Source: Epiperipatus broadwayi (lineage: Eukaryota; Animalia; Onychophora). Taken from it: a stretch of 64,000 nucleotides of DNA. Positions within the stretch are counted from its first letter, which is position 1, and each line of letters begins with the position of its first letter. Positions 9,370 through 51,900 of the stretch are shown here, one piece after another. The stretch is taken from the NCBI GenBank assembly GCA_028023455.1, contig JAQFVV010000002.1:10106001-10170000 (forward strand). The letters are read 5' to 3'. The notes under the pieces are model-generated. The model did not search any database, was not told the DNA's origin, and worked only from the letters and a program-made list of their open reading frames with translations. The position numbers were made by a program, and so were the translations under genes.

Positions 9370-12300
9370 TTGCAAAGGACTTTCTATTTTGTTAAAGTTG
9401 ACCTATGGTCAGCATTTCATCAGATTACAGTTTTAACAAAACAGCTGAACTCCTAATCATTAATATGCATTGGGACTAATCAAGGATAATAAGCTACCAT
9501 AGATATTAATGTGTTTCAAACAAAAGTGGATGGTCTACTGCAGGGAATTACATGGATGACATTCTGATAACCACTGAAACAGAGTGAACTAAGAGTATGC
9601 ATTAATAAAATATGTGAAAAGTTGAAAAGAATGGGTGCTTAACTGAATACCCTGAAATGCAAATGGTAAATGAAAGAAATTAAGTTCTTAAGACATATTA
9701 TTACTAATAAAGGGAAATAACTGAGTCCAGAGATAATGAAAAATGTACCTAAACTCAAAAACATCAAGGATCTCCAAGTATTCTGAGGATCTTAAAAATT
9801 TTTTGAAAGTTTTCTGAAAGGAAAACCTCATGTTGCAACTTCACTTTATAATTTGTTAAAGAAAAAACAATGATTAAAATGAGGAATCAAGCAAGATATT
9901 GCCTTTAAAAAAGTAAAATACTTACTAATGTCAATTTCTGATACACTACAAAAAACAGCAGAATGTAATATAATAACTATGAAGCTTGTGTTGTCATTTT
10001 TCATAGAGATTATGGTAGTTAATACATATTGTGCATGCATCTAGAATTTTGAATGGTTGAAAAAATTATAGCTATCTTAATGAAAAGGCTCTAGCAATAT
10101 TATTTGCCATGAAGAAGTTTCACCAACAAGTATACGAACATACTTTTTATATTTACACAGACCATAGTCACCTATTGGAAATACTGGCAAATCTGAAAAG
10201 ATATCCTGGTCATGTTACTTAATGTATGATCAGATGGATATACATATTAGCATTCCTTGATTTTGAACTTGGGTATAAGCATGAGAAACAAATTATTCAA
10301 GCCAATATTTATCAATAATAATAGATATGCAAGAGCATGATCCATGGACTACTGAAATAAACTATATTAATTCAATGAAATCTGAATTATTAAACAGTGC
10401 AGTCATAACTAATTGGACAAAAGATAACTCTGGATTCTAATTAGTTAAAAGATAAATAAAAAAAGGATGGCATCAAAGATGACCAAAGTACTTGTTTGAG
10501 TCATGAGAGTATATCCACATGTAACAGATGCATTTTAATGACAGACCACATGTTGATTTTGACATATGGATGAAACGTGTTGGATTTATATGAAAAACAT
10601 CCTGGAATTATTAGAACAAAGGAATTAGCTACATTATATATATATGGTGACCTGGAATGAACCAAGATATTGAACAAACAGTCAAAAGATATTGAGCTTG
10701 TCAGCTGACAGTTAGGCTATTATTTAGTCATTGAAATCATAGTCACAGGCAGAGGATCTATATAGATCATAACAGAACTTTCAATCATTATCCTTTACTA
10801 GCGATCACTGAATCTTATTCAAGATGGGCTGAATACAAAGCAATGAAGAATACAAGTATGGACACCATAGTAAAAATACTAAACTAAATGTTTTTATGTC
10901 ATAAATATCCAGAAATAATTGTATCATTACAATTAAAACATTTTTTAACTAGTAAGAAAATACAACATATTTTAGCAAATCCCATTATCGCCCAATAGAT
11001 TAGCTGAAAAAGCAGTGCAATAGGCAAAATTGTTGCTGAATAAAATGCAATATAAAGATATTAATAAAGCCTTAATGCCAGCTATGTTTTATCAACATTT
11101 CATGCCTAGTACAGTAACCAAAAAAATATCTGCAAAACTGTTGATCAGAAATTAAATTCAAAACATGTGTCATCACTGACTCCTAGCATGAGTAAGATAT
11201 GCGAGACCAATTTAAGTAACCTAAAACTTACTGTGGGAGAAACCATTTTGATACATGATGCATTAAAAAAATAGCAAAGAGGAATCATATCAAAACAACT
11301 ACATGATGCATTATAATAATATTAAATAGTGCTATCACACTTATAACATAAAGCTGTATAAATTAATAGCAATTAATCAATTAAAATGGCTTAGTGCTTT
11401 CGAGAAAATATATTTCTCATAATCATAGCCTATTATGACATTCATTGGAATCATTCTATATATATAATGTGCAAACTCTATGCAAATGAGTCAATTAGCC
11501 AATCGGTTTGATATAAGCAAAACATGCTTTACGATTAATGGTGAAGGAGTCTTCTGATATGAAGTAAGCCTCCTTTCCCTTATGTTTAACATCGTCTACT
11601 GAGAAGCATGATGTTAAAAGTAAAGTAAAGGAGGCTTACTTCATAGCAGAAGGCTCCTTTGCCATTAATCATAAAGATGGGCTAATTGACTCATTTGCAT
11701 AGAGTTTGCATATTATATATATAGAATGATTCCAATGAATGAGTCATAATAGGCTATGATTATGAGAAATACATTTTCTTGAAAGCACTAAGCCATTTTA
11801 ATTGCTATTAATTCATACAGCTTTATGTTATAAGTGTGATAGCACTATTTAATATTATTATAATTTGGACAAGCATAAAGCATAAATCTATAATTTATTA
11901 CATGATGCATTAAAAAGACAGTAAGCAGGAATTGTATCAAAACAACTATGAGTTGTACAGTTGTCTGATGGTAGGGAAGTCAGAAGATGTCAGTTATTGT
12001 AGAAGCTGTTTAAGTGATTCATTTGATCATATATATGGAAGAGTGAGTACTCGTGCAACTGAGTGGTTCTCATGCAGCTTGTATTGCTGATTCCATAAAA
12101 AGCAAGAATTATAAAGAAGTGTCATTGGAAGTTCAAATTGATGAGACATCCAGAAGTGAACAAAAAAGATTCTTCAAGAATAAGTCTCTGTACCAATGAC
12201 TCATCTGAAGTATCTATGGAGTTGTGCAATACAGAACAAATCAAGGAAGCACAGCAATATCAATTTCTAGATAATCTAGAGAGTGCAAAAGGTCAGAATG

Positions 12301-12480
12301 ATTTAAAGACTATATGCACATTTAGATTTAGAATCATTTTCTAGAATGAGGGAAGATATGCAATATCCAATTAAATATTTGAGGGAAGATGTGCAATATC
12401 CAATTAAATATTTGATGTATAATTTGTGAAGTATTGTAAATAAAATTTATATATTTGTGTATGTAAACATTAGTCAGACA
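9370..12480 (+). mobile_element. Degraded Ty3/gypsy (K02A2.6-like) pol, interrupted by a palindromic insertion
   Basis: Broken frames read KVDLWSAFHQI (~9394) and IYMDDILI (~9547) for RT, ALAILFAMKKFH..TDH (~10090-10170) for RNase H, and HPGIIRTKELA..WPGMNQDIEQ (~10600-10680) for the integrase zinc finger. A purine tract GAGGGAAGA lies in a 33-bp tandem duplication at 12347-12412. Confidence 0.8.
11314..11898 (+). mobile_element. Fold-back insertion of a Penelope-like 3' end (long palindrome + 34-nt tail)
   Basis: Arms 11310-~11593 and ~11610-11864. Direct repeat TACATGATGCATTA at 11300-11313 and 11899-11912. The right arm starts KVKEAYFIAEGSFAINHKDG, resembling the C-terminus of PLE GIY-YIG domains. 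Confidence 0.75.

Positions 12481-16356: not shown

Positions 16357-16361
<5 letters not shown>

Positions 16362-16403
<42 letters not shown>
16362..16403. repeat. (TA)n microsatellite, ~21 units
   Basis: Directly visible. Confidence 0.98.

Positions 16404-16406
<3 letters not shown>

Positions 16407-17442: not shown

Positions 17443-17486
<44 letters not shown>
17443..17486. repeat. (AT)n microsatellite, ~22 units
   Basis: Directly visible. Confidence 0.98.
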
Positions 17487-17764: not shown

Positions 17765-20700
17765 TTAAAATGAGATGCTGTTAGTAGGTAGTATTAATAT
17801 CCGTGTTTGAGTTTTATGAAATGATGAAAAGCAACAGCCACCCAATAAACAGCAAAGTTGCAGGGAGCTCCATCCAATTGCAATGGAGTCCCAGGTTTGT
17901 GCAGCTGTGAAGGGGTCAGCAGTGTGCATATCTCTATCCCTTTCCTTGTTTAGTATTTGGCAAAATGCTGTGAATATATTATTCAAGGTCTCAGCCTGGA
18001 ACACCAGCTTACAGCGCAATGCCCAGATGGAAAAGTTAATTATGGCCGAAAGCCGGATCTCAGAGAATATGCCCTTTTCAATTGCTGTCTTGAGGTTCAT
18101 TTCAATTTGATTTCTTGTCATGTTTTGTTGAAAATGAGTTCTTAAATGGTTCAAAGTTGTGCATTCGAAGAGGAAGTGATCGGTAGTCTCTTCCTGTCTT
18201 TGACACAATGTGCAATTAGGGTCAATATCTTGCCCCCTTTTATAGTGGAGGAAGGCATTTGTTGGGAGGGCACACAAGTTCGATTTCAATAGGAAGTCCA
18301 TGATTTTTGGCGGCAACTTCCAGAGCTTGGTCATCCTTATCATTCGAGGGATGTTGATTGAAAGGCAGCTGGGGATCCTCTGTTTTTGATGGTCAAGAAG
18401 ATCAAACACTTCCCAATACGCAAGTTTTCTTTGAAATAGGGTTGATGTTGGTTTGATGTTATCAAAGATAAAGTTGATCTGCTGTTGAAGGAGCAAGGCA
18501 CGTCCTCTGGGGGGTGGCCGATCAGTAGGTTGAATGTCCTTTTCCGGAAGTGGGCATTGAGCACGTTCATTTTCCTTGAAGATGTTGTAGAGTAGATTAT
18601 GGATGTGTTGTAAGTTGAATATAGTTAGCGAGTGTAGTGAGAGACCATTTAAAGTTTGGGGCTTTTGGAGGATTCTCAACCTAATTACAGGTGATCGGCC
18701 TGCCCAACACAGTTTTCTACAGGCGGTTTCTACTTTGTTGTGAACCCTGCCAAATAGTATATTATTTTTGGAAGAATGAGAGCATTTAAAAGGGCTACTT
18801 TCCCAAATAGGGAAAGGTATATTTTTGACAAAGATGCGATTGTGGTTTCAATTTTCTCTTTTAATGAGTCCTGTATCTCTTTACACATCACCATGGGTGT
18901 TTTTGATAGGTGAAATCCTAGAAATTTCTGTGGCGCTGCTTCAAATCCACCAGAGATCTTCTGGCCAGTAAGAATTAACCAAATAGCTGATTTTTTTGGG
19001 TTGACAAGGAAACCAGATAATTTGGCATGGTGATCAAGAAGTTGTTTTAGCTTACCCAGTTCATCATGGGATGAAAGAAACACAACTACATCATCCATAT
19101 AGGAGATGTGATTGATGTTCTCATTAAGTAGTGGAACAGCGATACCAGAAAACGTGGCCTCGATGTTCAACAGCATTGGATTGATATAGGCAGCAAAGAG
19201 AAGTGCACTCAGGGGAGAACCTTGGGGGATGGAGATGTAGGGCATAAAACCCGGGGCAATGCGACCATCTAGGGACAAGAACACTTCCCGATTGTAAAGA
19301 AGGTTCTCAATCATTTGAATGTATATGGGTGGTACATTTAGCTGTTCCAGAACACTGAGAGGAACATCAATTCTCACGGAGTCGAATGCCCCAGCTATAT
19401 CAAGTTGGACTGCAATGGGCTGGGACTTCCTTTGTCTCCACACATGATCGACCAGAAGTCTGAAGCGGCTGACAGCATCAGATGTTGAAGTGCCTTTTTT
19501 TGCAAATTGATAGTGCGAAAGTTGTTTAATTATGTTATATTGAATCTTGTCTTTAATGATGCTCTCGATGTCTTTAATGATGCTTTCGATGATCTTTGTC
19601 AATAGAGGAATCATCGAGATAGGATGCAGGTTATTGAGATCTGGTTGTGCATCTCGCTTCTTTAAAAAGGGTACCATGGAGATGGGACATAGGTTTATTA
19701 GGTGATGACTTTCCAGTGGCAATGAGGTCTATCATTCTGTGGATTACTGGATAGTAAAAGCTCTTAGGTGTAAAAGTAGAAATCTGGGAATTCCATGCAT
19801 GCAGGATGGACACTTTCTGGGAGTGATTGCAGTTTGTCAAGAATATCACCATCTGTGATGTTATGTTCCATACGGTTGTTAGTAACAAAAACTCTACGGA
19901 TGTTAGTGACACCAATAGGTTGTAATTTTCTTTTGTAAAAGTCTCTTATTTTGGAAAGCATGGAGAAGCCGATATATTGTTTACTATGTATCTTGATCAA
20001 TGAGGGTGCCTTGTTTTGTTGGTTGGATCCTAGGGCCCATCTGATGTAACCTCGAGTCCAGCAGTGTTGATATGCTAAGTAACTGCACGCTCGTTTAATT
20101 GATAAGTATTCAGCCAGGGATTGTTGGGTAGCTTTGTATTGTAGTTTAAGGTGAGTAATTTCTTGGATATTTTGCCTTTGTATGGGAAAATGTTTAAGTG
20201 TGTCGGCTATCTTGTCCAATTGTCTTAGTAATTTGAGGGGACCTTTATTATGTTGAGTGCATTTATGAATATGTGATTGTAGAATATTTATGAAGTTATT
20301 CCATTTATCACATGGTGAAAGTGTGTTTATATTAGCAGAGTTGAATGATATGTAAATCTCAGATATGAGTTGTATAGTGGCAGATTCCTTTGTGAGGATC
20401 CTCATTGTTCGTGGAATGTTGCTATATGAATGTGTGTTATCCACAATTCGGATAAGGACCTCTAGTGCCATGTGATCCATAAAGACAACAGGCCACAGGT
20501 TAACTTCAATGAAGGGAGCAAGTGAAGGAGAGAAGTATAAAAGATCAATGAGGGACTTAAACTGTGATGAATAGAATGAGAAGGCAGACACATCAAAAAG
20601 CTGTCTTCCACTTGTAAAGGTGTTGCTCAGTGATTTTAAGTGACTCCTTTCAAAAGAATCATATGTATGATTAAAGTCACCCAACATCAATGCAGGAAAA

Positions 20701-21081
20701 GGGTTAGTTCTTAGGACTGCGTTGATAGTGTGGATGATTCTATAGATTATATCTGATATGTTAAGTGTCCATCCATTTACCTGTATAATGGCTATGAGGC
20801 AGTTAGAGTCTATATGAATTATTTTGAAAAAGGTTATTTTAGATTTTTTATTAAAAAGAATTGCTACTCCACCAGATGCAGAGGAGGAGAAGGAATAATG
20901 GAAGTATCCAAATTTTTTGTATTCTCTGTATGATGTTTTGGTCAGATAGTGTGTGAAGTTTTGTTTCATTGAGGCAAAGAACATCAGGTGTATTATGCTT
21001 AAGCCAGAATGATAATGCTTGGATTCTGCCAAGGGAGTTCATGCCTCTGACGTTAATCGATGTTATGTTGAAAGTCATCAT
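17765..21081 (-). pseudogene. Frameshifted ORF2 (APE + RT + zf-RVT-like finger) of copy 2
   Basis: MMTFNITSINVRGMN..CLNETK, LMLGDFNH, IDLLY, VQLDIAGAFDSV, PQGSPLS, SYMDD and CTLCQRQEETTDHFLFEC across ORFs 20851-21081, 19764-21032, 18730-19722 and 17765-18679. In-frame 21-bp duplication IKDIESIIKD at ~19550-19590. Confidence 0.93.
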
Positions 21082-34126: not shown

Positions 34127-35424
34127 TAGTAATAATAAATAAAATAAAAATTCATATAACTCTACAATACTAGCCAAAAAAACTAAACTTCATTAAAACT
34201 CTTCCACAAACATGGTTTTATTTATTAACAAATAGATCTTTTCAAATGAAATTCAACTAAATATACCACCAATATATACCAAAAAAAATAGATTTCTCAT
34301 CATTCACTTCAAAAGTCAATTTCCTTTAATATCAAATGATGTCTTTATGAGATTGATGGTTTCAGATTCAACATATTTTATCCATCAAATATTTTTTTAC
34401 TTTTTTTTTTTCAATTTATTTTTTTCATAGAAGATAACCTCTGCATTGTCAAATAATATTTTATGACCGCTATTCAGTTCATGAATATACAAAGCTGAGT
34501 TATTATATTTATTTTTAACTCTAGGTCTTATGAGTTTTAACTTTTCATTAAGACTTAATTTACTCTGCCCTATATAAATTTTATAACAACTACAAGCAAT
34601 TTTATAAACTACTCTAGGAATAGATTTACAATCAATTATCTATTTTGAACTATTTAGTAATAAATTTAAATCAAGTCCTTTTTTCCAGGCCACTTTCATA
34701 CCACCCAATAAAAAACTATTCTCATAAATCAAGTTACTAATTGATAACTTATATGTCAAAGAAATAAATTCTTTATTTCTTTGCCATATAAGTCATTAAT
34801 TATTAATTGATTTTAAGAAATTTTTATTGGGTAATAAGAAAATGGCTTGAAAGAAAAGCCTAAATTTAAATTCATTACTAATTGGTTCAAAACAGTTAAT
34901 TGATTACAAATCTATTCTTGGCATGGTATAAAAAAATTCTTTGTAGTTTTCATAAAAATTATATAGGCTAGAGTAAATTAAGTCTTAATGAAAGATTAAA
35001 ATTCATAAGAATAAAGTTAAAAATAAACAGAATAACTGAGCTTTGTATATTAATACAGGTTACAAAATATTATTTGACAATACAGAAGTTATCTTTTAAG
35101 GAAAAAAATGAATTGAAGAGTAAAGAAAACTTTGATAATAAAATATTTTGAATCTGTGGCCATCAATCTCATGAAGACTTGTTGATGTTAAAGGAAGTTG
35201 GGTTTAAAAAGTAATGATGGGAAGCTATTATATATATATATATATATGGTATGTTTATAGCTATTATATATATATATATATATGGTATGTTTAGTTGAAT
35301 TTCACTTGAAAAGTTCTATTTGTTAGTAGATAAAACCCATGGTTGAGGAAGAGTTTTAGTAAAGTTTAGTTTTTTGGCATGTATTGTAGTGTTATATAAA
35401 TTTATATATCTTGAACTATTACTA
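34127..35424. mobile_element. ~1.3-kb imperfect palindrome made of a Penelope-like 3' end
   Basis: Arms of ~640 bp around the apex AAGAAATAAA-TTC-TTTATTTCTT (~34770). The right arm reads LCSFHKNYIG*SKLSLNERLK (GIY-YIG) and is collinear with 63340-63830. Confidence 0.8.
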
Positions 35425-35427
35425 AAA

Positions 35428-36930: not shown

Positions 36931-37231
36931 TACATTTTTATAATGTATATGTGCTACATGTATATATATATGTGAAAAATAAATACTGCATATGGTATGC
37001 TATAGTTTGCAAATTTCAATATCTGTAGTGAAGTTTGAAATAAAATATTTTAAATATGCAGACTACTGTATGTATATATGTAAATAATAAATAACTCAGA
37101 TTATGTGCAATTGAAAAGAAAATAACTGAAGCTTCCAATGAATTATATATGTATCATTTGTCTTTTGAAGAGTTTATTTATATATATAAATCATGAGAAG
37201 CATCAGTTACTTCCTGATTAATTATATATAC

Positions 37232-37466
37232 ACAAAGGGAGTAAATTACCCTCTCTTGGGCTATAAATTAAAAGCACTCTAAATGTTGAACAAAAGATCA
37301 AGCATAGAAAGAATCTATGTACTCTTGGCAGCATACCTTTGTTAACATTGTTGGTAAGTGTATTCTACTTATTTGTTCAACATTTAGAGTGCTTTTAATT
37401 CATGGCTTGGGAAGATGATTTACTCCCTTTGTTTAAATATCCATTGAGCCATATTTAATTTAATGT
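37232..37466 (+). mobile_element. Small fold-back insertion (~62-bp arms + 34-nt tail)
   Basis: 37232-37294 is inverted at ~37371-37432. TTATATATAC occurs at 37222-37231 and 37467-37476. Confidence 0.55.
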
Positions 37467-37854
37467 TTATATATACGTAATATATTCGTAAAATAGTTTT
37501 TTATTTTATTTATATATATATTCCTTTTGAATAGACTACAAAATACAAGTTTTTCTTTATTTAAAGAGGGATTATGGCTAAAAGAATATAGCTATAGGGT
37601 ATTTTTATATATTGAAGAAACTTTTTATTTTTTTCAAAGTCATTGCAATAAATATTTATTTCTAACATTTTTTCACCATAATTAAATATGCGATCATTCT
37701 AGTCAACTTCCAATATAGATTTTACTGATTCAAGCCACAAATGTTCAAGCTTCAAGAATATTTCTCTAGTTTGAAAATAAGGTTGTTTTATAATAGCATG
37801 TTGAAACCGCCTGAGGGCATGGTTTGTTTGTAAACAAAGATTAATATAATGTTT

Positions 37855-38240: not shown

Positions 38241-40787
38241 TCGGTTCGGTATTCTACGACAAAAAAATCAGCCGATTCTTCTTTTTTTTTGTTTGTTTGT
38301 TTTATTTTTATAACTTATAAATAAATCTATTTCCATTTAATGTTAACATTTACAAGCCAAAGTCAAACTTTGGGAGAGGGGGAAAGGGGGGGAAGGGTGT
38401 TTCCAATTGCTAACAGAATGGAACACAAAAAACTCGAAGGTTGACAAAGTTTTGATGGTAATTCTCCAAAACATCAATATATACAGCAATTAAAACCAAC
38501 TTTTTGGGCTCTTCAGGAAAAAAACAGCAGGCATGCAGCTTCAAGTTGTTTTGTTTGATAACCCAGTTCCAGCAGTCAGAGAAGAATTATTTCTTTGACA
38601 TTCGCAAAGTTTCCTATTTCAGCCATTTGATTCAGCTCGCAGTTATTGTCGCACGAAATGTGACTTAGAGCATGATTTGATAGGAATCACACTTAAACCT
38701 ACACTTGTCCAATTTTTTCAGCAGGAAATGGGGGCTAGGGAAGCATGAGACTCTGCTCATAATTGTTAGTAGACCTTCCTAAAACATGGGAGATAGAGGG
38801 GGAGGTGGTCTTAATGAATATTAAAATAGTTTTGACAATCAGAATTCCAGCCACCCTCAGACAATACTGTAGCCAAAAGTGAAATGTGATCGCACATCCA
38901 AAATGTTTAGCCCAAATCTGAGCTGTAAGCTGACACGATAGCTTCTGCGGCAGATTGACAAATCTCATGTTTCTGTGCATTAGCATTGAAATAAACACAG
39001 CAGCCACCCACCCCCCATATCAACGGACTATTTCTAGGCTTACGCATTAGAAATAGAACGTCCAATAGCGGCAGAGGCTGCATAAATGGCATATTTCTGT
39101 GTGCTATCATAGAAAAATGCCCTCCGGCAGTTTCAACATGCTATTGTAAAACAACCGGAAATAATTATCCAATAACTATAAAAAAACTGAGTTTCATAAT
39201 CTTATTCCAATGTATTCTTTTAACAACTTAAGTTCTTTTAATCTTTCTCCATACATAAATTAAAATCTCTGCCATTTAATCATTGACTCCACTAAGTCAT
39301 AAACTCTTAATCTTGATTTCTAAACTATAAGGATTTAGGTAAACAAATTTTTGAATGACTGGATTTATAAAAAGCTATATAACATTCTTGTATCCTCTTC
39401 AGCAATGAATCAATGATAGAATTTTTCAAAAGTTTGATTCTCTTCCAATCAAAGAATACAAAACTCTACCATTTAAGTTTTTTACCCACATAATTTGCAT
39501 TATATTCTTCATGTTGAACAGTTTTAATAAAGAATTTCCAGCTTTGAAGGAGATACACCATTAATGCTGTTTTAATAAAGATTTTACTACTTTTACTAGA
39601 AGTAACTAAAATTAATTAAAACTCATGTTAAAAAAAAACATGATTAGTAAAAAAAATAAATCATGCATCATAGGGGGGAGCAAAGTTCTCTGATAATGTG
39701 ATACATAGACTTTTATAAGTTTATAGTGGGCCATATGTAAAGAAAAGTTTTTCCTTTGCAATATATGAAGTGTTCATAATAGAGGAAAATATTGTGATCA
39801 TGCTGGAAAACAAGTTTCTATTTTCAATGAATTTTATGAAAGAAAGCTTTTAAAATTCATTTCAGGAAATCTTAGGATAATATCCAGCATTGTGTGTGTG
39901 CGTATGTTCATATGTAATAAACTCATAATCAGCTAAGTAGATTAGAGACTAATCATATACTCCAAACATGTATTAGTCAATTAAATAATTTATCATTTTT
40001 ATGGTAAATTTTGAAAAAAAAAATCTTTAATTTGTGCATGGATAATAGTTCACACAGGTAGTTATATTTGCACATCGTCTGTAAATAGTCACTAAGTCAA
40101 TGATTTTATTGACTTATATTTGATTAATTTCATCTGGAAATCTAGAACTACAAATGAGATGATTGAGGTTTAATAAATATATCCTTTGGAGTTACTTTTG
40201 GAAATATTTTTACATTCATATTTTTTTATGGGAATTGAATGAAGATTACACAGAGCAGGAAAGAGAGGCCATTCACTTTGTTAAAGATACCATATTAGAA
40301 TGGTTTTTGAATGAAATATAGAGGTAAACTATATTTGTAAGTAAGAGAGTAGTAAAATTTACATTTTCAAATATGTTTTTAGGATTGAATTTTAAAATTA
40401 ATTTTACTAAGTAAAAAAATTGGAGTGATAAGCTCATGTAGATTACTATTGTAAGCTATATAGGCTGGATGTATAAAGTTGGTTATAAAATACTGTGTAA
40501 TATCACAATCAATTTATGTTCAAATAAGAAATAAAATCATCATCAGTTGTCAGTATATATGTACCATATACATAAAAGAAGAATAGTATATAAAAAGAAT
40601 GAAATTACAGATAATTGATTGAAAATTTTAAATTTCTGATATAATATTTTAATCTTTTATGTGCATATGTCACTTTCTGATGCATTAAAAAAATTAATAA
40701 ATAATTTTTAATATTAATAAAAGTATTATTCAACTTGTCAGGTATATTTTTAATGAACTAATGAAGAGATTTATTTAAATATTTTTA

Positions 40788-40882
40788 AAACAGGCAAAAC
40801 TCACTATATGTATTGCCACACACAGCAAATTAGAGTAATCAATGGATGCCAAAGAAGTGATGATCATGTGATGTTTATTGGC
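40788..40882 (+). mobile_element. Minimal family H copy (inverted arm joined directly to the 3' tail)
   Basis: AAACAGGCAAAACTC..GAGTAATCAATGGATGCCA then TGATCATGTGATGTTTATTGGC. Flanked by TTAAATA(T/C)TTTTA at 40775-40787 and 40883-40895. Confidence 0.75.
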
Positions 40883-43800
40883 TTAAATACTTTTACAAAG
40901 TGATTGTCATTGCCAAATTGTATAATGAAATCCAGGTTTAGATAGGATATAAATGAAAAGAAAATCTCAAGTTTCAATAGTAATCAATATTTTTATTAGA
41001 TAATTAATGGAAGTTAGAACACTGAGATTCTTCTTTTATATATGGAAATTAGATATTGTGATTTGGAATTCTAAATGAAAGCAGATTATATCAATTATGT
41101 CTTAATTATTTTTACAATAATATATTTTTATTTTAGACCAAAAAGTTATTTTAGAAACAAAATATGATTTATTAGATGTACTGTGATAAATGAGTACAAA
41201 TTATAGGGAAGAAGAACTGATGGCATGTACAAAATAATTGCCATAGAATTTTACCTGGCAAACTCAAAGTTTGTGAATGAGGTGTTAAAGTCTTTCATGT
41301 CTTTGAAAGACCTTGGATAATCAAAAGTCACGTGAAGTAATTTATTCTGTGTATAAGTATGATAAAGAGCATGAGTGAAGAGTGAAGCAATGAAGAGAAG
41401 ACAAAACATGTCAGTATTTTTTCCATGGATTGCACACATGGAAAAAAGGATATTTGATGAACTAGGAAAATTTTTTATTGTATGCAAAAAATAAGTAATT
41501 TATTCTGAAGAGTCAGTTATATAAAATGATAAGAATTTGTATAAATTATCATGCTTACAAAAAATATCTATAACACATACAATGAGAACAGAATTTAAAA
41601 TGGGAGAAAAGTTTTTTTCTAGTCTTATCAAGGTTTGATTTTTTTTTAAAAATATATATATACAATATATGTGTTTTTATTTAAAATACTATTTAGAAAA
41701 TTTTGTAAATATTACCTAGAATTAATTTTTTAAAAGTATATTATGGCATTAATTATTTCTTGCAAAAGAATATCTTTATTTTTTTAACATTTATTAGTCT
41801 CGTTATCTTAGTAGTCATGGATCATTGCTTAGTTGTTATAATGCTTTTGCTGTAGCTATAACAACATAATAAGTAATTTATTTTACTTTTATGATTATAT
41901 ACAATTACAAAAACGAGAATATATGATTTGTTAGCAAAAAATTTTAATAGATAATATAACAGCTATTAATTGAGCACAAACTCAACAATAAGTCTATCAT
42001 ACAAATACAAACACACACAAATATCTCCTTAATAAATGTTCACTACTATAAGTTATAAGTAAGCAACTAAATTTTATTGATATGTTTTAAATAATTATGA
42101 AAATGTAGAATTAATTTTAAAAAAAGATAGCAAATCCTGTAATTTATTTAGAACTTATGTTATTACTTAATTTTGAATCATTTAATTAGACAATATACAA
42201 ATATGTCTGTGAGCTTAATTTGTCATCCTATATATATATATGTCACTACAGACTTATAAATAAATCATATATATATATATATGTTTGTGCAAGACAGTTA
42301 GATGCATATGGATTATCATCTTATACATATGATATATTACCATAAGCTTATTATAAGTCATATCCTTCATCAAAAAAAAATACTGAAATCAGAATTTTGG
42401 CTTTATACATGAACAACAAGCTCCACTGACTATGAATTCCTCAAATATCTACACAAAGATATATTATATTGCTGTTATATGTTAGTTCAAATCTTATTAA
42501 TATATTAAAATAATTTAAAATCTTGGATATAGTAATTTTCATTGTATTCATATAATTTATAAGATTTTTATTACAAACATAAATTAATGTACATTAAATT
42601 AAATGAAACAAATTCTTCATAATAAAAAATTATTTCTTTATAGTTTATTTCTAAAGTTGTTATCTTTTAAGAATTTTCAATAATCTTTGTATAGTTATAG
42701 AGTTATTAAAATTATTAAGATTTTTTTTTTTTTAATAAATAAAAATTTTGATTATTTTTTTACCACTTTAAAATAACCTGTATTATAGGAAAGGGGGGCA
42801 ATTCAGGAATTTCATGCAACTAAATTAATTAATTTTATTTGGGGTTATGGAATGTAAAACTTAAAAAAAGAATCATGCTTAAAAAATATATACCATCAAA
42901 GTAATGCATCAAAAATTACCTTGTTTGCAATACTTGAAAGAAGTGAAATGCTAATGGGGGGGGGGAGAGATGAACTTCTTATTTATTTCACTAATACTCC
43001 ACAAATTTAATCAATAGATATTTCTTCAGTTGATAACATTCTCCATCATTAGAACTTATATCTGGCACATTCAATTTCAGATATTTTACTTATTTCAGGG
43101 TATATTTCATCAAATGTATTGAAACAATGGAAGAGAAAATAAAGACAAAAAAGTGTGATAGTAATAAAAAAAATATGTTAAATGAGCCAATTCTACAAAA
43201 TCTAAAAATATAAATTTAGAATTGACAAGAGAAAAAAAACATTGTCAAAAATAATTATAATCAAAGAATAACACAAAAATAAAAGTGAATATCTGTGATC
43301 AATCCTTGTAAACATTGACTAAAATTCATTATAGTACAAAAAAGATAAAACAATCAAACAAAATTAAGAAATAACAAGTCCATTATGCATATGCAAAAGT
43401 TAATAACTTGTAGAGAAGATTTTCCTCTGTCATTAACTAAGGTACTGATGTTCAGAAAATCAATAGACTCTCTATTGTCAAGACCTAATGGAAAATTTAT
43501 TTAGTTTACATAATGGAAGTTTATTGAAGCAGTTAACTATATAGATTCATTCTATACAAAATATAATATTTACAGTATACATTTTAATGAAGACTATTCA
43601 CTTTATGCAAAGTGCAATATTATATAACCAATCCTGTAATAAAGTCAGTGTTGTGTGTCAAAGGTTGTTCATTCTTGAATTTTTAGAAGACTATCACATA
43701 TTCAACTTTCATAAAAATAATTTTAAAGAATAATTTTTGAATACGCAGACATCATTAATATGCAGAGGAAATTGGTATTCATTTAGCATTCTTTTTACAA

Positions 43801-43887
43801 AAATGCATTAGTTTCTCAAAATGTAAAAAAAAAATAAAAAGTGATACAAGCATAAAAATTTACCACATTATAAGTAACTGGTGAAGA

Positions 43888-44058
43888 TTAAACAAGGCAA
43901 AACTCTCTCTCTATACAGTAGTGTCACCCTGTGCCAATCAGAGTAATCAATGGATGCCAGAAGACACAGGGTGGCACTACTGTATGGAGAGAGTTTTGCC
44001 TTGTTTAATAACAATTATGTGCTAGTATGAGATAGTGATCATGTAATGTTTTGTGGTT
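43888..44058 (+). mobile_element. Short fold-back copy of family H (variant subfamily)
   Basis: Arms 43887-~43933 and ~43966-44009, 49-nt tail. TAACTG(G/A)TGAA(G/A)A occurs at 43875-43887 and 44059-44071. Confidence 0.75.
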
Positions 44059-46056
44059 TAACTGATGAAAAGTCAACTTAACATTTAAAAATTATTCTAA
44101 ACTTATATTGTTATTTAAATAAACAGTTCTGACCACAATACACTAATTGGTTACTATAATTTTAATTGATATGGTGACTGGTTGTAAAATAAACAGTAGT
44201 TTAAAAATTTTATTAAGTCTTTGAGAGTCATTAGCAATTTTCTATTCAAAGCTAAGATTATAATAGTGAGTCAAAATGTTAAAGAATGAGCATTTGATCC
44301 ATTTAATAATTAAATGGAGACACAGGTAACAAAATGCATAAAGTTTGAGAAAGACAATCACCATTACTTTACTTCTAATAGGAAAGATGCTGTGCTTTGC
44401 ATTTATAGAAAAATAAAACAACAACAAAAAAGATAAATATATATATATATCATGATATTGCATTATTATCACAGTTGTTGACCTTTTGAAAGCTTTTCTG
44501 TTAAAGATTAACCTTTATTAATAAAAATTATTCTTTGGCAAGATGGAAAATCAGTTTCATCTTTTTTCATAAGATTATATTGTTCTAATCTTTTAATCAT
44601 TAATTAATATTTAATTTCTATACAATTTCTTTCAATAAACTATATTCATTATTAATTTATTTTGGAAGTATCATTATTCACTGAAACTACTATATGATTA
44701 TTTTAATTATATAATTATTTTAAACCAATAAAATATCACATAACTCTATCATCTAACCTCAGCTTACATATTGCTATTTTATCATCATAACATTTCTTTC
44801 ATCACCTCTATGCCACCTATTACCCACAGAGTAAAGATACCTATAGGTATTAAAAAACAAGATATTATAATATATAGATGCTGAACTGATTTCAGATCTA
44901 TACAAGTAAGTTGCCTTATATTGAAAGCATTTATGTGTTTTTTAGTTTGGCCCAACATCTTGATGGTATAACAAAAAGATAAATAATGGTTTCTAGAAGA
45001 AAGATGTATTAGATCCTGAATATGCACTGTTCCAAGATTCAAAACTCTTTACTGATAAAAACCATGCACTTGAAATCAGTCTAGAAATATACGATATGAC
45101 AACATGAAATAGAGATTTATTTATTAAACACTATCATTTAGTATATTCTTATTTAATAAGGTTTATTTAAACTTATGGGAAATCAAAAATCTTGATTTTT
45201 GTCTATATTAAGATATTAGACCAGAATGAAAATTGGAATCCATTTTTTTTATTATTTATAGATTGTTATTTTTACAACAGTTTGAAGATTCTACCGTTTA
45301 TATAAACTTAGACTGTTATCATGTGATTTGTAATATATATATATCGTATTATCTTAATATTTAACATAGACTCTCAATTAATTAACGCCATTATCAAGAT
45401 ATCAATAATGATTTTTTCTTCTTTTCTTCAGGCTTTTTCTGTCACGTTTACACATACCTGCTATTTATTTTACTTTTTTTTTTTTAATCTTTTCTACTTT
45501 TTAATTTTTTTGCCAACTATTGGGTCAAATGCATAGTTTAAAATGAGACTTAAACGCTTTAATTTTTGATATTCACATAAATAAGTAAGACAGAAACTTT
45601 ATCAGTCAGTACTTAACTAATTTTAAAAAAAAAAAAAAAAACACAGTTTGCACATATTAATGATTAGTTTTAATGCTTGAAGAGTGATGTAAAAAAAAAG
45701 AGAATCTTGAATTACTATTTATATCAGGAAGCTTTTTATGTGAAGTGGAATCATATTACCGCCCCTAAAGATGAGAAAGAGCAAGTCAGATTTTAAAAAG
45801 GATTCTCACATCTCTGAAATTGTATAACAACGATAATAAAAAAAATACTGAAAGAGGATTATTATATTTTCCTATCAAAATATTATTAACCTTATATATA
45901 TATAACATTATGTAATATTTTTATTGCACAATATTTTTGCAGCATGTTCTGTTTTGTACATATATTATGTATGTATTCATGTATTTGGGTTTACAATTAT
46001 TTTTTAAAAATAATGCTGCAGAGGACTGAATTCATTAAAGTTAAGAGAGTGTAATA

Positions 46057-46139
46057 GTGGCAATACGTATAGAGAGTTTTTGCCTGTTTTAATAACAGTT
46101 ATAAACAAGCATAAGAAATGGTGATCATGTGATGTTTAT
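46057..46139 (+). mobile_element. 3' fragment of family H
   Basis: GTGGCAATACGTATAGAGAGTTTTTGCCTGTTTTAATAACAG...GATCATGTGATGTTT, nearly identical to 8382-8461. Confidence 0.8.
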
Positions 46140-48473
46140 AATACTACAATAGTGAGTTGCTAGTTACTCATGCTGTTTTGGACAGAGAACATAACATATT
46201 TAAAAACATTTAAAACTTTGTACATAATTTAAAAATATGTAAAAATATTTTATACAAAAAATATTTAATAAAAATGGCAAAGAGGATTTTTATGCCATTA
46301 AATGAAAAGAACAAAGGTATATTGTTAATGAGATGAATTCGTTCTCATATGTAGTTACACATGTAGATGTTAATAATAAGCTTCAATGGTGTTAAATATA
46401 TGACTAATTCTTCGGTTATTTATTATTCAAACAAATATATTTATAGTTCAGTTAACAAAGATGAGTCAACGGGATATAATCCATTAAAATAAAGGCTATA
46501 GCATAGACAAGTAATATTAATGCATAATTAACAACACGATTAGAATTGACTATCAATTCATAAGTATTGATAAATAATAGATATTATGAAGTCTTGATAC
46601 GAGTTTGTTGTAGAAGAAATCATTTAATGTGATATCTCAGATTACATATACAAAATGCAAATTAGTTATAATATATACATATTACATATAAATAATATAT
46701 CATTATTGAAGTCATATGTATTATATGCTAAGTTTATTTTAAATTATGTAGCATTGTTTTTAAACATTTATTTAAGTTTGCTAAAATTAGCCGTTTAAAC
46801 AATTAATAAACCACAGAACTCACCTTGTTAAACAATCTAATTGATGTGATAACCAAATAGATAGAAATTCTTTGAGATAGACATTAAGACAATTTTTTAA
46901 TAATTATTATTGTGAGTATATAAAGAAAGCTGCAGAGATTAATGAATATGATATAAATAATAATGGAAGAACAGTTACAATGGGCTCAGTAATGGTATTA
47001 ATAATGAAATGTTATTATGAGTATAAACTATTGTCTTAAATAAATGTATTTACATAGATTGTAAAAAGGCATATTTTAAATGTATAAAGACATTTAAAAA
47101 AAATGCAATTTCTATATTGGTTTTTTTTTATTTTTAAAAAATAAACAAAACTTTTATAATTTGTTTATTAGTGCTATGTGATTATTAAGTGTTAAAATTT
47201 AAGAATTAGTTGTATGTGTTCATTGAGATTATCCTACATGTTTGATGTTATAAAATATTTGTTATTGCTGCTTCTCATTTGTTACTATTGTCTTTGCTCC
47301 AGATAATAGATTGCTTTCAAATAAATTTGTTACCTATTTATATATTTAATTTTTATGTTTCATATGTTTTATTTTTGTAGACAGACACAAATGTTGCATG
47401 AAGCTATTTTTCAGGAATATACATGTGCTTAACATGGTTGCAATGAATTTTATTATTTTGAATTTGAGTACATGTTTGTACTATATTAAGTTCATTGCTC
47501 AAAGATAGGTGGAATAACTAGAAAGTAGATTCTGTGACTCATGGATAATACTTAATCATTTTTAGAGATAATTTACTTTTGCTTGCCACTTGTATAGAGC
47601 AATTTATTATTAATAAAACTTTATATCAGTCAAGTGGCAAAATAAATTACATTTTAATTAAATGTCACCAGAAGAAATTGATAACATTAAATAACAGTCA
47701 ATCTCATGTATATTATTAAGACTAACAATACCACATTTCTGTGAAAATAACACCAGATCTTATATTAATTTTTGCTCCAAAAGACACTATAGGGCTTATT
47801 TCCAGGAGATGTCTTATTTTTTATATACAAAAATCTACATTTATTCAAGTCCTTTTTTTCTTTACAGGAACCTGTAAAATTCTTACTCTGGAAGTCATCC
47901 ATAATTTGTTTCTTGTAGTCACCAAAATAGTTTTTTTTTTTGTACTCATCTTATCTGATGATCAGGATATTATTCCATTTAAATTTACCATTAAATCAAG
48001 TGTTAATTGAAGGCTTGCAAGACAGGAGTTGACTATAGTTAAAAGTGATTTGTCCACACAAAAGCAGCAAAAAAATGCAAGCATAAAAATTCAGAAAATA
48101 TTTTTATTTCACACATGCACATTAAATATGTCAATTTATAACAAGCAGCATATTCAATTACAACTACATCCATTATCAAGTGTGTACATTGTAAACAGTT
48201 CCAAATTAGTTGTAATAATCCTACTTGGGTAGTCTTTTAAAAAAAAAATTTAGGAGAAAGATTGATGATTTAACTGTATTTTTATATTGGACTATTTCCA
48301 TCATCTAATATGTGTGTTGAATGTCTTTAGAAAAGTTTAATTTTGAGTTAAATGTTCCAAATGCATTCAACTGTTAGTAATATCACAGCAAACAAATGTT
48401 AATAATATCACAGCAAACAGGTTAGTATATGCACTAACTGTTAGTAATATCACAGCAAACAGGTTAGTATACG

Positions 48474-48516
48474 CACAACGTTTCGAGAGGTATTTTTCTC
48501 CCCTCTTCTTCAGGTG
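48474..48516 (-). ncRNA. Mirror copy of the same hammerhead motif (left arm)
   Basis: Exact reverse complement of 48727-48769. Confidence 0.75.
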
Positions 48517-48618
48517 TTGCTGGCCTGACCAGTGACAGTACTAGCATGGGATTCGAACCTGGGTCCTTAGATTCTTGATTATTGAAATTTAAGGTAACGT
48601 TCTAACCAACTGAGCCAT

Positions 48619-48700
48619 GGCAGGATGGCTCAGTTGGTTAGAGCATTACCTTAAATTTTAATAATCAAGAATCTAAGGACCCAGGTTCGAATCCCATGCT
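48619..48700 (+). promoter_or_regulatory. tRNA-derived Pol III internal promoter (SINE head); mirror copy on the minus strand at ~48543-48618
   Basis: A box TGGCTCAGTTGG (48626-48637) and B box GGTTCGAATCC (48684-48694). The acceptor stem does not pair, so this is not called a tRNA gene. Confidence 0.85.
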
Positions 48701-48726
48701 AGTACTGTCACTGGTCAGGCCAGCAA

Positions 48727-48769
48727 CACCTGAAGAAGAGGGGAGAAAAATACCTCTCGAAACGTTGTG
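48727..48769 (+). ncRNA. Minimal type I hammerhead ribozyme motif in the SINE body (right arm)
   Basis: CAC-CTGAAGA-A-GAGGGG(AGAAAAATA)CCTCTC-GAAACGTT-GTG: intact cores, 6-bp stem II, palindromic ACGT stem III, GUU triplet, 3-bp stem I. Confidence 0.75.
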
Positions 48770-48780
48770 CGTATACTAAC

Positions 48781-48915
48781 CTGTTTGCTGTGATATTACT
48801 AACAGTTAGTGCATATACTAACCTGTTTGCTGTGATATTATTAACATTTGTTTGCTGTGATATTACTAACAGTTGGTGCATATACTAACCTGTTTGCTGT
48901 GATATTACTAACAGT
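48781..48915 (+). repeat. 42-bp / shorter-unit tandem repeat in the SINE body
   Basis: The core TTTGCTGTGATATTA occurs four times in the right arm and three times (inverted) in the left arm at ~48370-48462. Confidence 0.9.
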
Positions 48916-51900
48916 TGAATGCATTTGGAATATTTAACTCAAAATTAAACTTTTCTAAAGACATTCAACACACATATTAGATGATGGAAATAGTCCAATA
49001 TAAAAATACAGCTAGAACACCATCATCACAAACCTTCAGAAAAACATTGATGATTTAACTTAAGATAAACTTTGATTATTAAAATCACTTGTGTTATTTT
49101 AATAAAAAAAGTTAGGGTGAAAAAATGTTTCAGAAATCAAACTATTTTTTTTAAAACTTGAATATTTAAAAGCTGCTATGATGAAAAGATCTAAGTATTA
49201 AATAAAATAAATTCCTAAATGTATATAAATGAAATTATAAATAGTACCTGATATACTTAGTTATAGTAGATAAATTGTTTTTCAATACAAGTAAAATTAT
49301 TTTTGTTGAAAATTGTCAATGGAAAAATACAAAAGAACTACATAATTTCATTATCATTTATTTAAAGCATTAATGTCAATAAAATTGTTTATTTATACTT
49401 TTATTACTTCATAATTTAAAATATGTTCATTGATGTTCTATGTGGCTAGCAATCTTAACTAGGGTTTATATTTAGAGTAGGGTTTAAATTATAAGCATCC
49501 TGAAAAATTATGCTAGGGCTTATTTTTTGGTTAGATCCCTTTTTGGGGGAAACATGGTAGTAAAAAACACACAATTTAAAAATATAAATAGCTCACTATA
49601 TATCAAAAGCTTTTAAAATCCCCTCAAAGAAACCAGTGAAAAAAAAAATTGATGGTGAAGATGTCAGTTAACTCCTAATATAGGGTGAAAACCAGTTCAA
49701 TAAAGAAAATATTTATTATTTTTATATAGTTGTTTTATTTCAATTGTGTTGGAACCATTACTGTAATAATATTATATACAATATTACAAGACAATACATA
49801 TAATATTAATAATAATAGCAATCATGACATAAACTTTTTGTTTCATATTTTTTCTTGTGAAACTAAGAACGAAATCTTCAGTGCAACCATTTAAAATCTG
49901 CAGCATGATATGATTGATAAATACTTTTTTCCATATGAGTACATTTCATATTTATTTATTAGTTTAAACTGTAATTCTAGTATGTTGCTGGATCTATAAA
50001 CAATTATAGTTTTCATCTGATAACTTCAACACTTTGTTATTCTGGAAATTAAAAAAAAGTTGAAGATAAACATTGGTTCTTAACTTCATCATCGTATATG
50101 GATTTCATATACTTTATTGACTAATAGCACTATTTAATAATTGACACATTAGAAATCTGATCCACAATATGATTAATACAGTAATTAATATATCAAAGTT
50201 TAAGTTGACATTTGATTCACTTTTAATGAGATTCTACAACCCAGTTTACTAAACATATCAATTCCACTTGTTACTGGAAGTTACAAGATGGTATATTCAT
50301 TTCTGCCCTAACAAGAGTTTTAAGGCAATGTTTAGACTATCTCATATTAAAAGTCTTAATAAATATTTTATAAACTTATAATTTAGTATCTTCATTTATA
50401 TTGTTTTATTAGGTAGGTATAAGTTATTGCTGTGCTTTTATTTAATTGCAATATAACATTTTTTTAAATTTATTTTCTCCACCTAATAAAATTAATACAA
50501 CATAATAAAATTGTGCCAGTTGGAGTTAACATTAATATAATATCTCACATTAGTTTAAACATATCACAAGAGCCTTATCAATTTCAAAATTGCAATAAAA
50601 GACATTAAGTATCTCCTATATAGTTCTGCTTATTTTTGAATTTATTCTGACTGAAATTACAAAATAATTTTCTTTTTTTTTCTTCTTGTTATCCCAAATA
50701 AATTATAAGTATTTTTATAATGCACACAGTAAATATAATTAAAATATTTATAAAATAAGGAGTAAATTTTCATTCTTATGAACTTCTGAGTTTGTTTAAA
50801 TTTGAAGTCCATTTGGCAGGATTTTTCTTTCAATATGTCTACCAGTTTTAAATGTGAACCTTTTACAATTATAAATTGACAGTAGCAATGTGTTTCATGC
50901 ATGTAGGTCAAATGGAGTTCCTACTCCATTAGTTGCAAGTTAAAATTCAATTCAATTCCATTTTTAATTCAGTTCAAATTCAGTTTTACTTTTTAATAAT
51001 TTTCAGCTTAAATTTTCAGTTTCATTATTTTCAGTTGTTATCATTTCTTCATTTAATTCTTCCTGGTTCTCCTCTATAAAAATCTATGTTGACCTATTTA
51101 TAAACTTTTATCAGAGAGGATGATTGTACAAATTAACAGAGCAATTGAATTATTGTATATGCATACATTAACATACAATTAATAATTCTCTATCTATAAG
51201 CATAAGTGATAACTAATTAAGCTGTTCAAAACTATTTTAAATTGCAATAAAAATATGCTTGAGAATTAATTATAAATATTAATTTAGAATAACTATAATT
51301 TTAAGTCTCCATGACTATTATTTAATAGTAATGAAATACCAAGTATTTCTATACTTTAATTTAATCATAATATTAATAAATTATTCTGATACTATTGAAA
51401 TTATTCTGACAGACTGCATATAAAAAGTCTCATACACAATCTGGCAGAGAGCCTATCACACATCTTGAACAGTTTAATTATTCATCACTCTCAGGAGATT
51501 TATAGATGAAGTTTATTTATTTTCATAATATAATTTAGCAATCATGATAACACACCACTGATATAATATACCTATTTGATATATTTAATTATTGTCAATT
51601 AAAATTTAAAATTTTATATAATTGACCATTTAAATAGGTCTTGACAAACATCAAGTCAACCATAAGGTTACAATATATATATAAATGATACATTTTGTGG
51701 GTTCGTCCATGTATGATTTTAATTATAAACATACTGATGTTTCAGCTTGATCTCATTAAGCCATCAACTGAGTAATGAATAAAATATTATAAAGATACTT
51801 GTAGAGGTACTGAAACACTAATTTATAACAATGCTAAAGTTCCATCAATAGAGGGGAAAAAACAGGTACATAAAATTTAAAAAATAAAATGTCAGAAAAT

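What the first reader, a model, noticed from the sequence alone, without database searches (positions are those of the whole stretch)
11300..49060. Three unrelated fold-back insertions share an unpaired 3' tail of exactly 34 nt
Seen: from the end of the sense arm to the second direct repeat is 34 nt at 11865-11898 (14-bp repeat), 37433-37466 (10-bp, low-complexity repeat) and 49012-49045 (15-bp repeat), although the three sequences are unrelated. The inverted arm starts within or at the edge of the left repeat (overlaps of 4, 0 and 2 nt). From memory, a short ~30-40-nt tail beyond inverted pLTRs has been reported for Penelope. Inference: a sequence-independent length rule, e.g. an RT or endonuclease footprint that stops self-copying ~34 nt from the priming site. 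This would fingerprint the mobilising enzyme and tie the tRNA-SINE to PLEs.
Basis: partly seen in the sequence, partly recalled or inferred. Interest (0 to 1): 0.82.

Follow-up and report, generated by a model that had tools for sequence, protein, structure and literature searches.

The report
Penelope-type insertion tails, 34 nt
Three unrelated small repeats are each inserted as a head-to-head double copy whose outer copy runs 34 bases further than the inverted one; this is the published insertion footprint of Penelope-like retrotransposons (a 30-40-base "tail"), not a new rule, and another family in the same window has 45-55-base tails.

Summary
Fold-backs A (arms 11310-11864), B (37232-37432) and C (48274-49011) are each followed by 34 unpaired bases and flanked by exact direct repeats of 14, 10 and 15 bp. 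These repeats are rarer than chance (P<0.001, about 0.006, about 0).

"Exactly 34" depends on giving the 4, 0 and 2 overlapping bases to the arm. If they go to the target duplication, the tails are 38, 34 and 36.

The architecture is the published footprint of Penelope-like elements (PLEs): an inverted 5' copy plus a one-sided tail of 30-40 bp, 34-37 bp in Drosophila virilis Penelope itself. In vitro work explains it by two reverse-transcription start sites and priming from both target strands. A and C carry hammerhead-type motifs, as PLE termini do.

A universal, sequence-independent 34-nt ruler is not supported. A fourth, hammerhead-bearing family (X) has four insertions in this window with target duplications and tails of 45-55 nt. 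Its inverted arms end at one sequence position while tail length varies.

In two X insertions the inverted copy holds sequence that the sense copy lacks. That excludes "self-copying that stops early" for them.

The scan had already noted this architecture many times elsewhere in this genome. Verdict: new examples of a known kind.

The parts
11300..11313 (+). A: left target-site duplication TACATGATGCATTA; its last 4 nt also pair with the arm end
   Evidence: anchored-repeat null P<0.001
11310..11593 (-). A: inverted copy, lacking the last 34 nt; holds an A3-U8-type hammerhead motif at 11426-11392
11610..11864 (+). A: sense copy; hammerhead-type motif AUGAUUA..GAAA at 11756-11790
11865..11898 (+). 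A: unpaired 3' tail, 34 nt (38 if the overlap is given to the duplication)
11899..11912 (+). A: right target-site duplication
37222..37231 (+). B: left direct repeat TTATATATAC (low complexity, probably a target duplication)
   Evidence: P 0.005-0.007 window-wide, 0.03 given a TA-rich flank
37232..37432 (.). B: fold-back; arms about 37232-37294 and 37372-37432, loop about 77 nt; no hammerhead motif found
37433..37466 (+). B: unpaired tail, 34 nt
37467..37476 (+). B: right direct repeat
48261..48275 (+). C: left target-site duplication ATTGATGATTTAACT; its last 2 nt also pair with the arm end
   Evidence: P about 0
48274..48618 (-). C: inverted copy (345 nt), one internal repeat unit of about 42 nt shorter than the sense copy; lacks the tail
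48625..49011 (+). C: sense copy starting at a tRNA-like head (A and B boxes by eye); hammerhead-type motif CUGAAGA(+A)..GAAAC at 48730-48766
   Evidence: not recognised by ARAGORN or Rfam
49012..49045 (+). C: unpaired 3' tail, 34 nt, 79% A+C; part of the family's normal 3' end
   Evidence: 334 contigs of other copies diverge behind 49046
49046..49060 (+). C: right target-site duplication
8053..8930 (+). Family X insertion F8k: TSD TAAAAGTAAACA (8053-8064 and 8919-8930), inverted copy 8065-8362, 5'-truncated sense fragment with tail 8363-8466, full sense copy 8539-8918 with minimal hammerhead 8718-8747; tail 8864-8918, about 55 nt
   Evidence: TSD P<0.001
56731..57251 (+). Family X insertion F56k: TSD 14 of 15 matches (56731-56745 and 57237-57251), inverted copy 56746-57070 (its outer 120 nt, 56746-56865, pair with the sense arm; 56866-57070 is element sequence the sense copy lacks), sense arm 57071-57191, tail 57192-57236 (45 nt)
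   Evidence: TSD P=0.001
43875..44070 (+). Family X insertion F43k: TSD 10 of 12 matches (43875-43886 and 44059-44070), inverted 43887-43963, sense 43965-44009, tail 44010-44058 (49 nt)
   Evidence: TSD weak, P=0.12
40775..40895 (+). Family X insertion F40k: TSD 12 of 13 matches (40775-40787 and 40883-40895), inverted copy 40788-40851, then only a 31-nt 3'-terminal sense piece 40852-40882; the two pieces share no element sequence
   Evidence: TSD P=0.009

Best explanation
A, B and C are ordinary insertion products of Penelope-like retroelement (PLE) machinery acting on short, non-coding, mostly hammerhead-bearing RNAs.

Proposed steps:
1. The endonuclease makes a staggered cut, which gives target duplications of 10-15 bp.
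2. The bottom strand primes cDNA at the outer start site near the RNA's 3' end. This gives the sense copy with its tail.
3. The top strand primes a second cDNA at an inner start site some tens of bases upstream, often through 0-5 nt of microhomology. This gives the inverted copy without the tail.
4. The two cDNAs meet head to head.

The unpaired tail is the interval between the two start sites. Its length is set for each family by where those sites lie on the RNA: 34 nt in A, B and C, and about 45-55 nt in family X. The shared value of 34 lies inside the published 30-40-bp range and equals the tail of Penelope itself. It may reflect a common partner enzyme or coincidence, but it is not a universal, sequence-blind ruler.

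Shown here: the anatomy, the target duplications, the hammerhead-type motifs, the fixed inner end in X, and inverted copies that hold sequence the sense copy lacks. Inferred: the order of priming events and which enzyme is responsible.
For: Anatomy and target duplications.

Published footprint: an inverted 5' copy plus a one-sided 30-40-bp tail (PMC8557442); a 31-bp tail in Adineta vaga (PMC3846280); the '34-37-bp repeat' at the pLTR 3' end of D. virilis Penelope (PMC2377424). A purified PLE protein cuts and extends both strands and starts reverse transcription at two adjacent internal sites whose interval is the tail (PMC11167929).

Hammerhead-type motifs lie upstream of the tail in A (A3-U8 type) and C, and in X by reading.

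The C tail is the family's normal 3' end, since 334 contigs diverge behind 49046.

Family X: inverted arms end at consensus positions 13, 5-12, 16 and 12-15; outer ends lie at 58-71; tails are 45-55 nt.

F40k and F56k: the inverted copy is not contained in the sense copy.

Target duplications vary in length (10-15 bp). No poly(A) is present.
Against: No PLE gene lies in the window; the only reverse transcriptases are two APE-type LINEs.

Rfam does not call any hammerhead, and ARAGORN calls no tRNA. The ribozyme motifs therefore rest on a regular-expression scan and on reading.

B has no hammerhead motif and only a 10-bp, low-complexity duplication.

Three identical values out of three would be unlikely (about 1 in 121) if tails were uniform over 30-40 nt, so a real shared spacing is not excluded.

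No empty site was seen for any of the three.
Confidence: 0.72

Rival explanations
1. A true molecular ruler. One PLE lineage of this genome holds the last 34 nt or so of any template RNA, so the second strand can only prime 34 nt in from the end, whatever the sequence. Family X, at about 50 nt, would be served by another lineage with a different spacing.
For: Three unrelated sequences give 34 nt under one consistent convention, taking the arm end as the limit of complementarity. That convention fits a footprint model physically. Penelope's own tail is 34-37 bp. A fourth family (Y, 34127-35459) may have 35 nt, but with only a weak duplication of 7 of 8 matches.
Against: There are only three cases. 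Each boundary is uncertain by 1-4 nt. Within X, the inner end is fixed in sequence while the tail varies by 10 nt. The in vitro work places both start sites at defined RNA positions in a stem-loop.
Confidence: 0.2
2. Snap-back self-copying. A single cDNA turns round at the RNA's 5' end, copies itself and stops about 34 nt short of the priming site.
For: In A and C the arms meet at a very short spacer (16 and 6 nt), and in C the apex is the element's 5' head. Self-priming has been discussed for PLE palindromes (PMC3846280).
Against: In F40k the sense piece is only the last 31 nt, while the inverted copy carries about 65 nt of upstream element sequence. In F56k the inverted copy carries about 205 nt that the sense copy lacks. 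Neither can be a copy of its neighbour. C's arms differ by one internal repeat unit. The PLE protein extends both strands in vitro.
Confidence: 0.05
3. Twin priming by the APE-type LINEs of this genome, acting on SINE-like RNAs.
For: Two LINE copies lie in the window. Duplications of 10-15 bp also fit APE-type LINEs.
Against: There is no poly(A) or microsatellite tail, and BLAST finds no similarity between the elements and the LINE copies in the window. Hammerhead motifs and a one-sided tail are PLE traits. Twin priming normally gives inversions, not full duplications (from general knowledge of L1 biology).
Confidence: 0.03

Closest known systems
Penelope-like element insertion footprint: pseudo-LTRs, an inverted 5'-truncated copy and a one-sided 'tail' (Evgen'ev and Arkhipova; Craig et al. 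2021, PMC8557442; Arkhipova et al. 2013, PMC3846280)
   Same: Variable-length target duplication, a head-to-head inverted copy, a tail of tens of bases at one end only, a hammerhead motif upstream of the tail, and AT-rich targets. F8k also shows the partial tandem plus inverted copy arrangement.
   Different: The units here are short (about 130-420 nt) and non-coding, with no PLE gene nearby. One has a tRNA-like head. Family X has a longer tail (45-55 nt) than the published 30-40 bp.
The '34-bp repeat' (34-37 bp) at the 3' end of the pseudo-LTRs of Drosophila virilis Penelope (PMC2377424)
   Same: The same length as the tails of A, B and C, and the same position at the element's 3' end.
   Different: A different organism and unrelated sequences.
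Internal initiation of reverse transcription at two adjacent sites by the Anolis PLE protein PAc (PMC11167929)
   Same: The tail is the interval between two start sites, both target strands prime, and the start sites lie roughly 75-250 nt downstream of the hammerhead cut site. The C tail is AC-rich, and the inner end lies in the loop of a stem (48980-48987 with 49020-49027, z = -3.8).
   Different: In PAc the start site shares no homology with the cut DNA. Here 2-5 nt of microhomology are common at both junctions. No biochemistry exists for this genome's elements.
Metazoan retrozymes: hammerhead-bearing non-autonomous retroelements
   Same: Short, non-coding, high-copy repeats that carry hammerheads and are presumed to depend on PLEs.
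   Different: Retrozymes are described mainly as tandem head-to-tail arrays that yield circular RNAs. Here the units are single head-to-head insertions.

Membership tests
PLE-type insertion (mobilised by Penelope-like element machinery) | Inverted 5'-truncated copy directly next to the sense copy | tested here: met
   Arms 11310-11593/11610-11864, 37232-37294/37372-37432 and 48274-48618/48625-49011
PLE-type insertion (mobilised by Penelope-like element machinery) | One-sided tail of 30-40 bp at the 3' end | tested here: met
   34 nt in A, B and C. Family X exceeds the range at 45-55 nt
PLE-type insertion (mobilised by Penelope-like element machinery) | Target-site duplication of variable length | tested here: met
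   14, 10, 15, 12, 15 and 13 bp, with nulls of P<0.001 to 0.009. No empty site was seen
PLE-type insertion (mobilised by Penelope-like element machinery) | Minimal hammerhead ribozyme motif in the terminal repeat | tested here: inconclusive
   A motif scan finds AUGAUUA..GAAA in A and CUGAAGA(+A)..GAAAC in C, each with a 6-bp helix II. X has CUGAUGA..GAAACUAGUC by reading. None is found in B. Rfam reports none. Cleavage is untested
PLE-type insertion (mobilised by Penelope-like element machinery) | A partner PLE (telomerase-like RT plus GIY-YIG endonuclease) that shares the 3' end | not testable with these tools
   No PLE gene lies in the window. Earlier scan notes report PLEs elsewhere in this genome, but their sequences could not be fetched
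tRNA-derived SINE (element C) | A recognisable tRNA-related head with A and B boxes | tested here: inconclusive
   By eye, GCTCAGTTGGTTAGAGC and GGTTCGAATCC at 48630-48710. ARAGORN finds no tRNA. Rfam gives only a weak tRNA-clan hit, E=0.075. Contigs of other copies carry a partly conserved sequence upstream of the head, so the head may not be the family's 5' end
   Family X: 45, 49, about 51 and 55 nt with significant duplications
   In X the inner ends cluster at consensus 12-16, while outer ends range over 58-71 and tails over 45-55 nt. Only four insertions, so suggestive only

The most novel reading that the evidence does not exclude
The interval between the two reverse-transcription start sites of one PLE lineage is a fixed physical distance of about 34 nt, set by the ribonucleoprotein and not by the RNA sequence. 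Tail length would then identify which PLE lineage mobilised a given non-autonomous family: 34-nt families by one lineage, families of about 50 nt such as X by another.
Probability: 0.2. Interest if true: 0.55.

Novelty: new member of a known kind. Interest (0 to 1): 0.3.

Why it matters
The tail is the one feature of Penelope-like insertions that has a published biochemical explanation. Clean, young, non-coding examples with exact target duplications are therefore useful natural test pieces for that model.

The data in this window already favour two points. The second strand primes independently, because the inverted copies are not copies of their neighbours. The inner start is fixed in the sequence.

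If tail length proved to be lineage-specific, it would give a simple way to assign orphan hammerhead repeats to their partner retrotransposons. As it stands, the finding re-identifies a known signature and adds no new class.

Tried and rejected
1. Rfam at gathering threshold over the whole window, and at E up to 1-10 over the four elements. It returned only generic hairpin (miRNA-precursor) hits, with no hammerhead or tRNA.

2. ARAGORN found no tRNA.

3. A search for a PLE gene in the window found only two APE-type LINEs.

4. Fetching more of this genome failed. The look-up of encoding contigs with a LINE ORF found nothing on record. A metagenome scan with an 18-mer of family C gave 29 loci, all chance matches with no homology to A, B, C, X or Y.

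5. Empty sites. No paralogous empty site lies in the window. No skipping joint for C appeared among the rows that read laying printed, although 1512 joints were not printed.

6. A common fold of the tails. Only C shows a stem better than shuffles (z = -3.8); A, B, X and Y do not. No shared structure was found.

7. Shared tail sequence. BLAST finds none. A and X share only the 8-mer CAAGCATA, which I judged marginal.

8. Reading F43k and F40k as having arms that extend to consensus position 31, which would give tails of about 34 nt. I rejected this. The extension is the reverse complement of the target duplication, is AT-rich and needs gaps. F43k's duplication is weak (P=0.12), so that case stays open.

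9. Other fold-backs (30.4 kb, 34.1 kb, 57.3 kb, 61.8 kb, 27.2 kb, 59.5 kb) are too old, too complex or lack a duplication, so they give no clean tail length.


Full report
**1. The observation**

Reading the three places and scanning for inverted repeats confirms the coordinates.

| Element | Left repeat | Arms | Tail | Right repeat | Arm/repeat overlap |
|---|---|---|---|---|---|
| A | TACATGATGCATTA, 11300-11313 | 11310-11864 | 11865-11898 (34 nt) | 11899-11912 | 4 nt |
| B | TTATATATAC, 37222-37231 | 37232-37432 | 37433-37466 (34 nt) | 37467-37476 | 0 nt |
| C | ATTGATGATTTAACT, 48261-48275 | 48274-49011 | 49012-49045 (34 nt) | 49046-49060 | 2 nt |

Complementarity stops sharply at the stated arm ends.

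I tested the flanking repeats against random placements of the same geometry in the window. A direct repeat this long, anchored at the arm start and lying within 100 nt beyond the other arm, has these probabilities:
- A: 0.0003-0.0007.
- C: 0 in 3000 and in 1500 trials.
- B: 0.005-0.007, or 0.03 when the null is limited to TA-rich left flanks.

So two of the duplications are beyond doubt. The third is probable, not merely low complexity.

A's target lies in an older tandem duplication of about 49 bp (11252-11301 against 11899-11948, about 85% alike). A 14-bp duplication inside the second unit remains the simplest reading.

BLAST finds nothing convincing between the units of A, B, C and the other families, so they are unrelated as claimed.

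**2. How exact is 34?**

The figure rests on counting the bases shared by the left repeat and the arm as arm. Counted as target, the tails are 38, 34 and 36 nt.

For C, contigs of other family copies in public runs of the same organism diverge just behind 49046 (334 contigs in run X1). This shows that the tail is the family's normal 3' end. It also leaves the end at 49045 or 49046.

With one mismatch, C's repeat extends 4 nt into the tail (18 of 19 matches).

Every boundary therefore carries 1-4 nt of microhomology ambiguity. The equality is still notable. If tails were uniform over 30-40 nt, three equal values would be expected about once in 121.

**3. What the elements are**

The window holds no Penelope-like gene. 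Its only reverse transcriptases are two APE-type LINE copies, at 1013-4426 (+) and 17765-23511 (-).

Rfam and ARAGORN recognise neither hammerheads nor a tRNA. A direct motif scan finds:
- In both arms of A: AUGAUUA, a 6-bp helix II, then GAAA. This is an A3-U8 core of the type that earlier follow-ups of this scan reported for this genome's PLEs.
- In both arms of C: CUGAAGA, one extra A, a 6-bp helix II, then GAAAC.

B has no such motif.

In each case the motif lies 75-250 nt upstream of the inner boundary. This is the same order as in the Anolis element PAc.

**4. The literature**

- PLE insertions are described as partial tandems with, often, an inverted 5'-truncated copy and a 30-40-bp tail at one end only (PMC8557442).
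- In Adineta vaga the tail is 31 bp (PMC3846280).
- In Drosophila virilis Penelope it is the '34-37-bp repeat' at the 3' end of the pseudo-LTRs (PMC2377424).
- A purified PLE protein cleaves and extends both target strands. It starts reverse transcription at two adjacent internal sites of the RNA, and the interval between them corresponds to the tail (PMC11167929).

The architecture, including a value of 34, is already published.

Earlier notes of this scan record the same architecture many times in other parts of this genome. At least one follow-up filed it as the PLE footprint.

**5. Test of the ruler inside the window**

Family X has at least six copies here. Four are insertions with target duplications. 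Positions are counted on the family consensus from the first T after GAGAG.

| Insertion | Target duplication | P | Inverted-arm end | Sense-copy end | Tail |
|---|---|---|---|---|---|
| F8k | 12 of 12 | <0.001 | 5-12 | 67-71 | 55 nt |
| F56k | 14 of 15 | 0.001 | 13 | 58-59 | 45 nt |
| F40k | 12 of 13 | 0.009 | 12-15 | 66-71 | about 51 nt |
| F43k | 10 of 12 | 0.12 | 16 | 67-70 | 49 nt |

None of the tails is 34 nt. The inner end is nearly fixed in the sequence, while the outer end and the tail length vary by about 10 nt. A start site defined by the RNA predicts this pattern. A distance measured from the priming site predicts the opposite. Four insertions make this suggestive, not conclusive.

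Other fold-backs gave no clean values: Y at 34127-35459 with 25-35 nt, a tandem/inverted complex at 57.3-58.2 kb with roughly 50 nt, and others.

**6. Test of 'self-copying that stops'**

In F40k the sense part is only the last 31 nt of the element (40852-40882). The inverted part carries about 65 nt of element sequence from further upstream (40788-40851), and the two share nothing.

In F56k the inverted copy carries about 205 nt (56866-57070) that the sense copy lacks.

An inverted copy that holds sequence absent from its neighbour cannot have been made by copying that neighbour. It must have been made from an RNA template by a separate priming event. This agrees with the two-strand extension seen in vitro.

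In A and C the arms are near-symmetrical, so they do not decide the point. C's arms do differ by one internal repeat unit of about 42 nt.

Microhomology occurs at both junctions: 4, 0 and 2 nt at the inner junction of A, B and C, and 3-5 nt at the outer junction of three X insertions. This suggests annealing of the cut DNA ends to the RNA, which differs in detail from the PAc report.

**7. Structure or sequence in the tails**

Only C folds better than shuffles (z = -3.8). It forms an 8-bp stem, 48980-48987 with 49020-49027, and the inner boundary lies in its loop. Its tail is 79% A+C, which recalls the AC-rich stem-loop of PAc.

A, B, X and Y show nothing comparable, so I found no common determinant.

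**8. What could not be done**

The decisive test is a genome-wide histogram of arm-end and 3'-end positions per family. It needs the genome, and no tool supplied it:
- A look-up by protein found nothing.
- A metagenome scan gave only chance 18-mer hits.
- The runs available are short-read contigs that break at these high-copy repeats.

No empty site was seen.

**9. Verdict**

It is wrong in its mechanism for at least family X. It is unproven in claiming a sequence-independent 34-nt rule.

The best reading is that the tail is the interval between two reverse-transcription start sites, fixed for each family. The value 34 falls in the known range and equals that of Penelope itself. A lineage-specific physical spacing of about 34 nt remains possible; I put it at about 0.2.

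These are new examples of a known kind, of modest interest.

Noticed in passing
window 1013-4426 (+) and 17765-23511 (-): Two non-LTR retrotransposon copies (APE endonuclease, RVT_1, zf-RVT). The second also has a 603-aa upstream ORF with a zinc knuckle. Both are split over several ORFs, so they are probably decayed.
   Followed up: partly
window 34127-35459 and 63211-63892: Family Y. A 1.3-kb head-to-head dimer (arms about 75% alike, 3-nt apex at 34769-34771) sits at 34.1 kb, and a single monomer of about 680 nt at 63.2 kb. They share 25 nt beyond the dimer's arm end, so Y also has a one-sided tail (25-35 nt). Its duplication is weak.
   Followed up: partly
window 30429-31297 and 57297-58170: Two older complexes with both tandem and inverted copies of one unit, the 'partial tandem plus inverted copy' layout described for PLEs. 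No target duplication could be called.
   Followed up: partly
window 8363-8466: Inside F8k, between the inverted and the full sense copy, lies a 5'-truncated sense fragment of family X. It is complete to its 3' end, including TTGGGTTAAAA. This shows that TTAAA belongs to the element and that the outer junctions of three X insertions overlap the target by 3-5 nt.
   Followed up: yes
window 48618/48619: 275 contigs of other C-family copies carry a partly conserved sequence (agreement 0.61) just upstream of the tRNA-like head. In many copies the head is therefore not the 5' end, and C may be the terminal part of a longer element.
   Followed up: no
window 49011 and 49015: Most C-family copies in the runs have A where this copy has G at 49011. 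The inverted arm has the matching C at 48274, which the target duplication could also explain.
   Followed up: no
window 43891-44081, 45992-46182, 48284-49047: Families X and C reach summed contig word depths of 1-3 million in runs of this organism. C-family contigs also occur in runs labelled as two other organisms, so these are very high-copy repeats shared across related taxa.
   Followed up: no
window 16362-16403 and 17443-17486: Two (TA)n tracts about 1 kb apart, next to the 3' side of the minus-strand LINE. They generate many spurious inverted-repeat calls.
   Followed up: no
window 37247-37264 and 37401-37417: In B a short inner segment around CTTGGG has the same orientation in both arms, so it breaks the palindrome. 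This looks like a small internal inversion.
   Followed up: no
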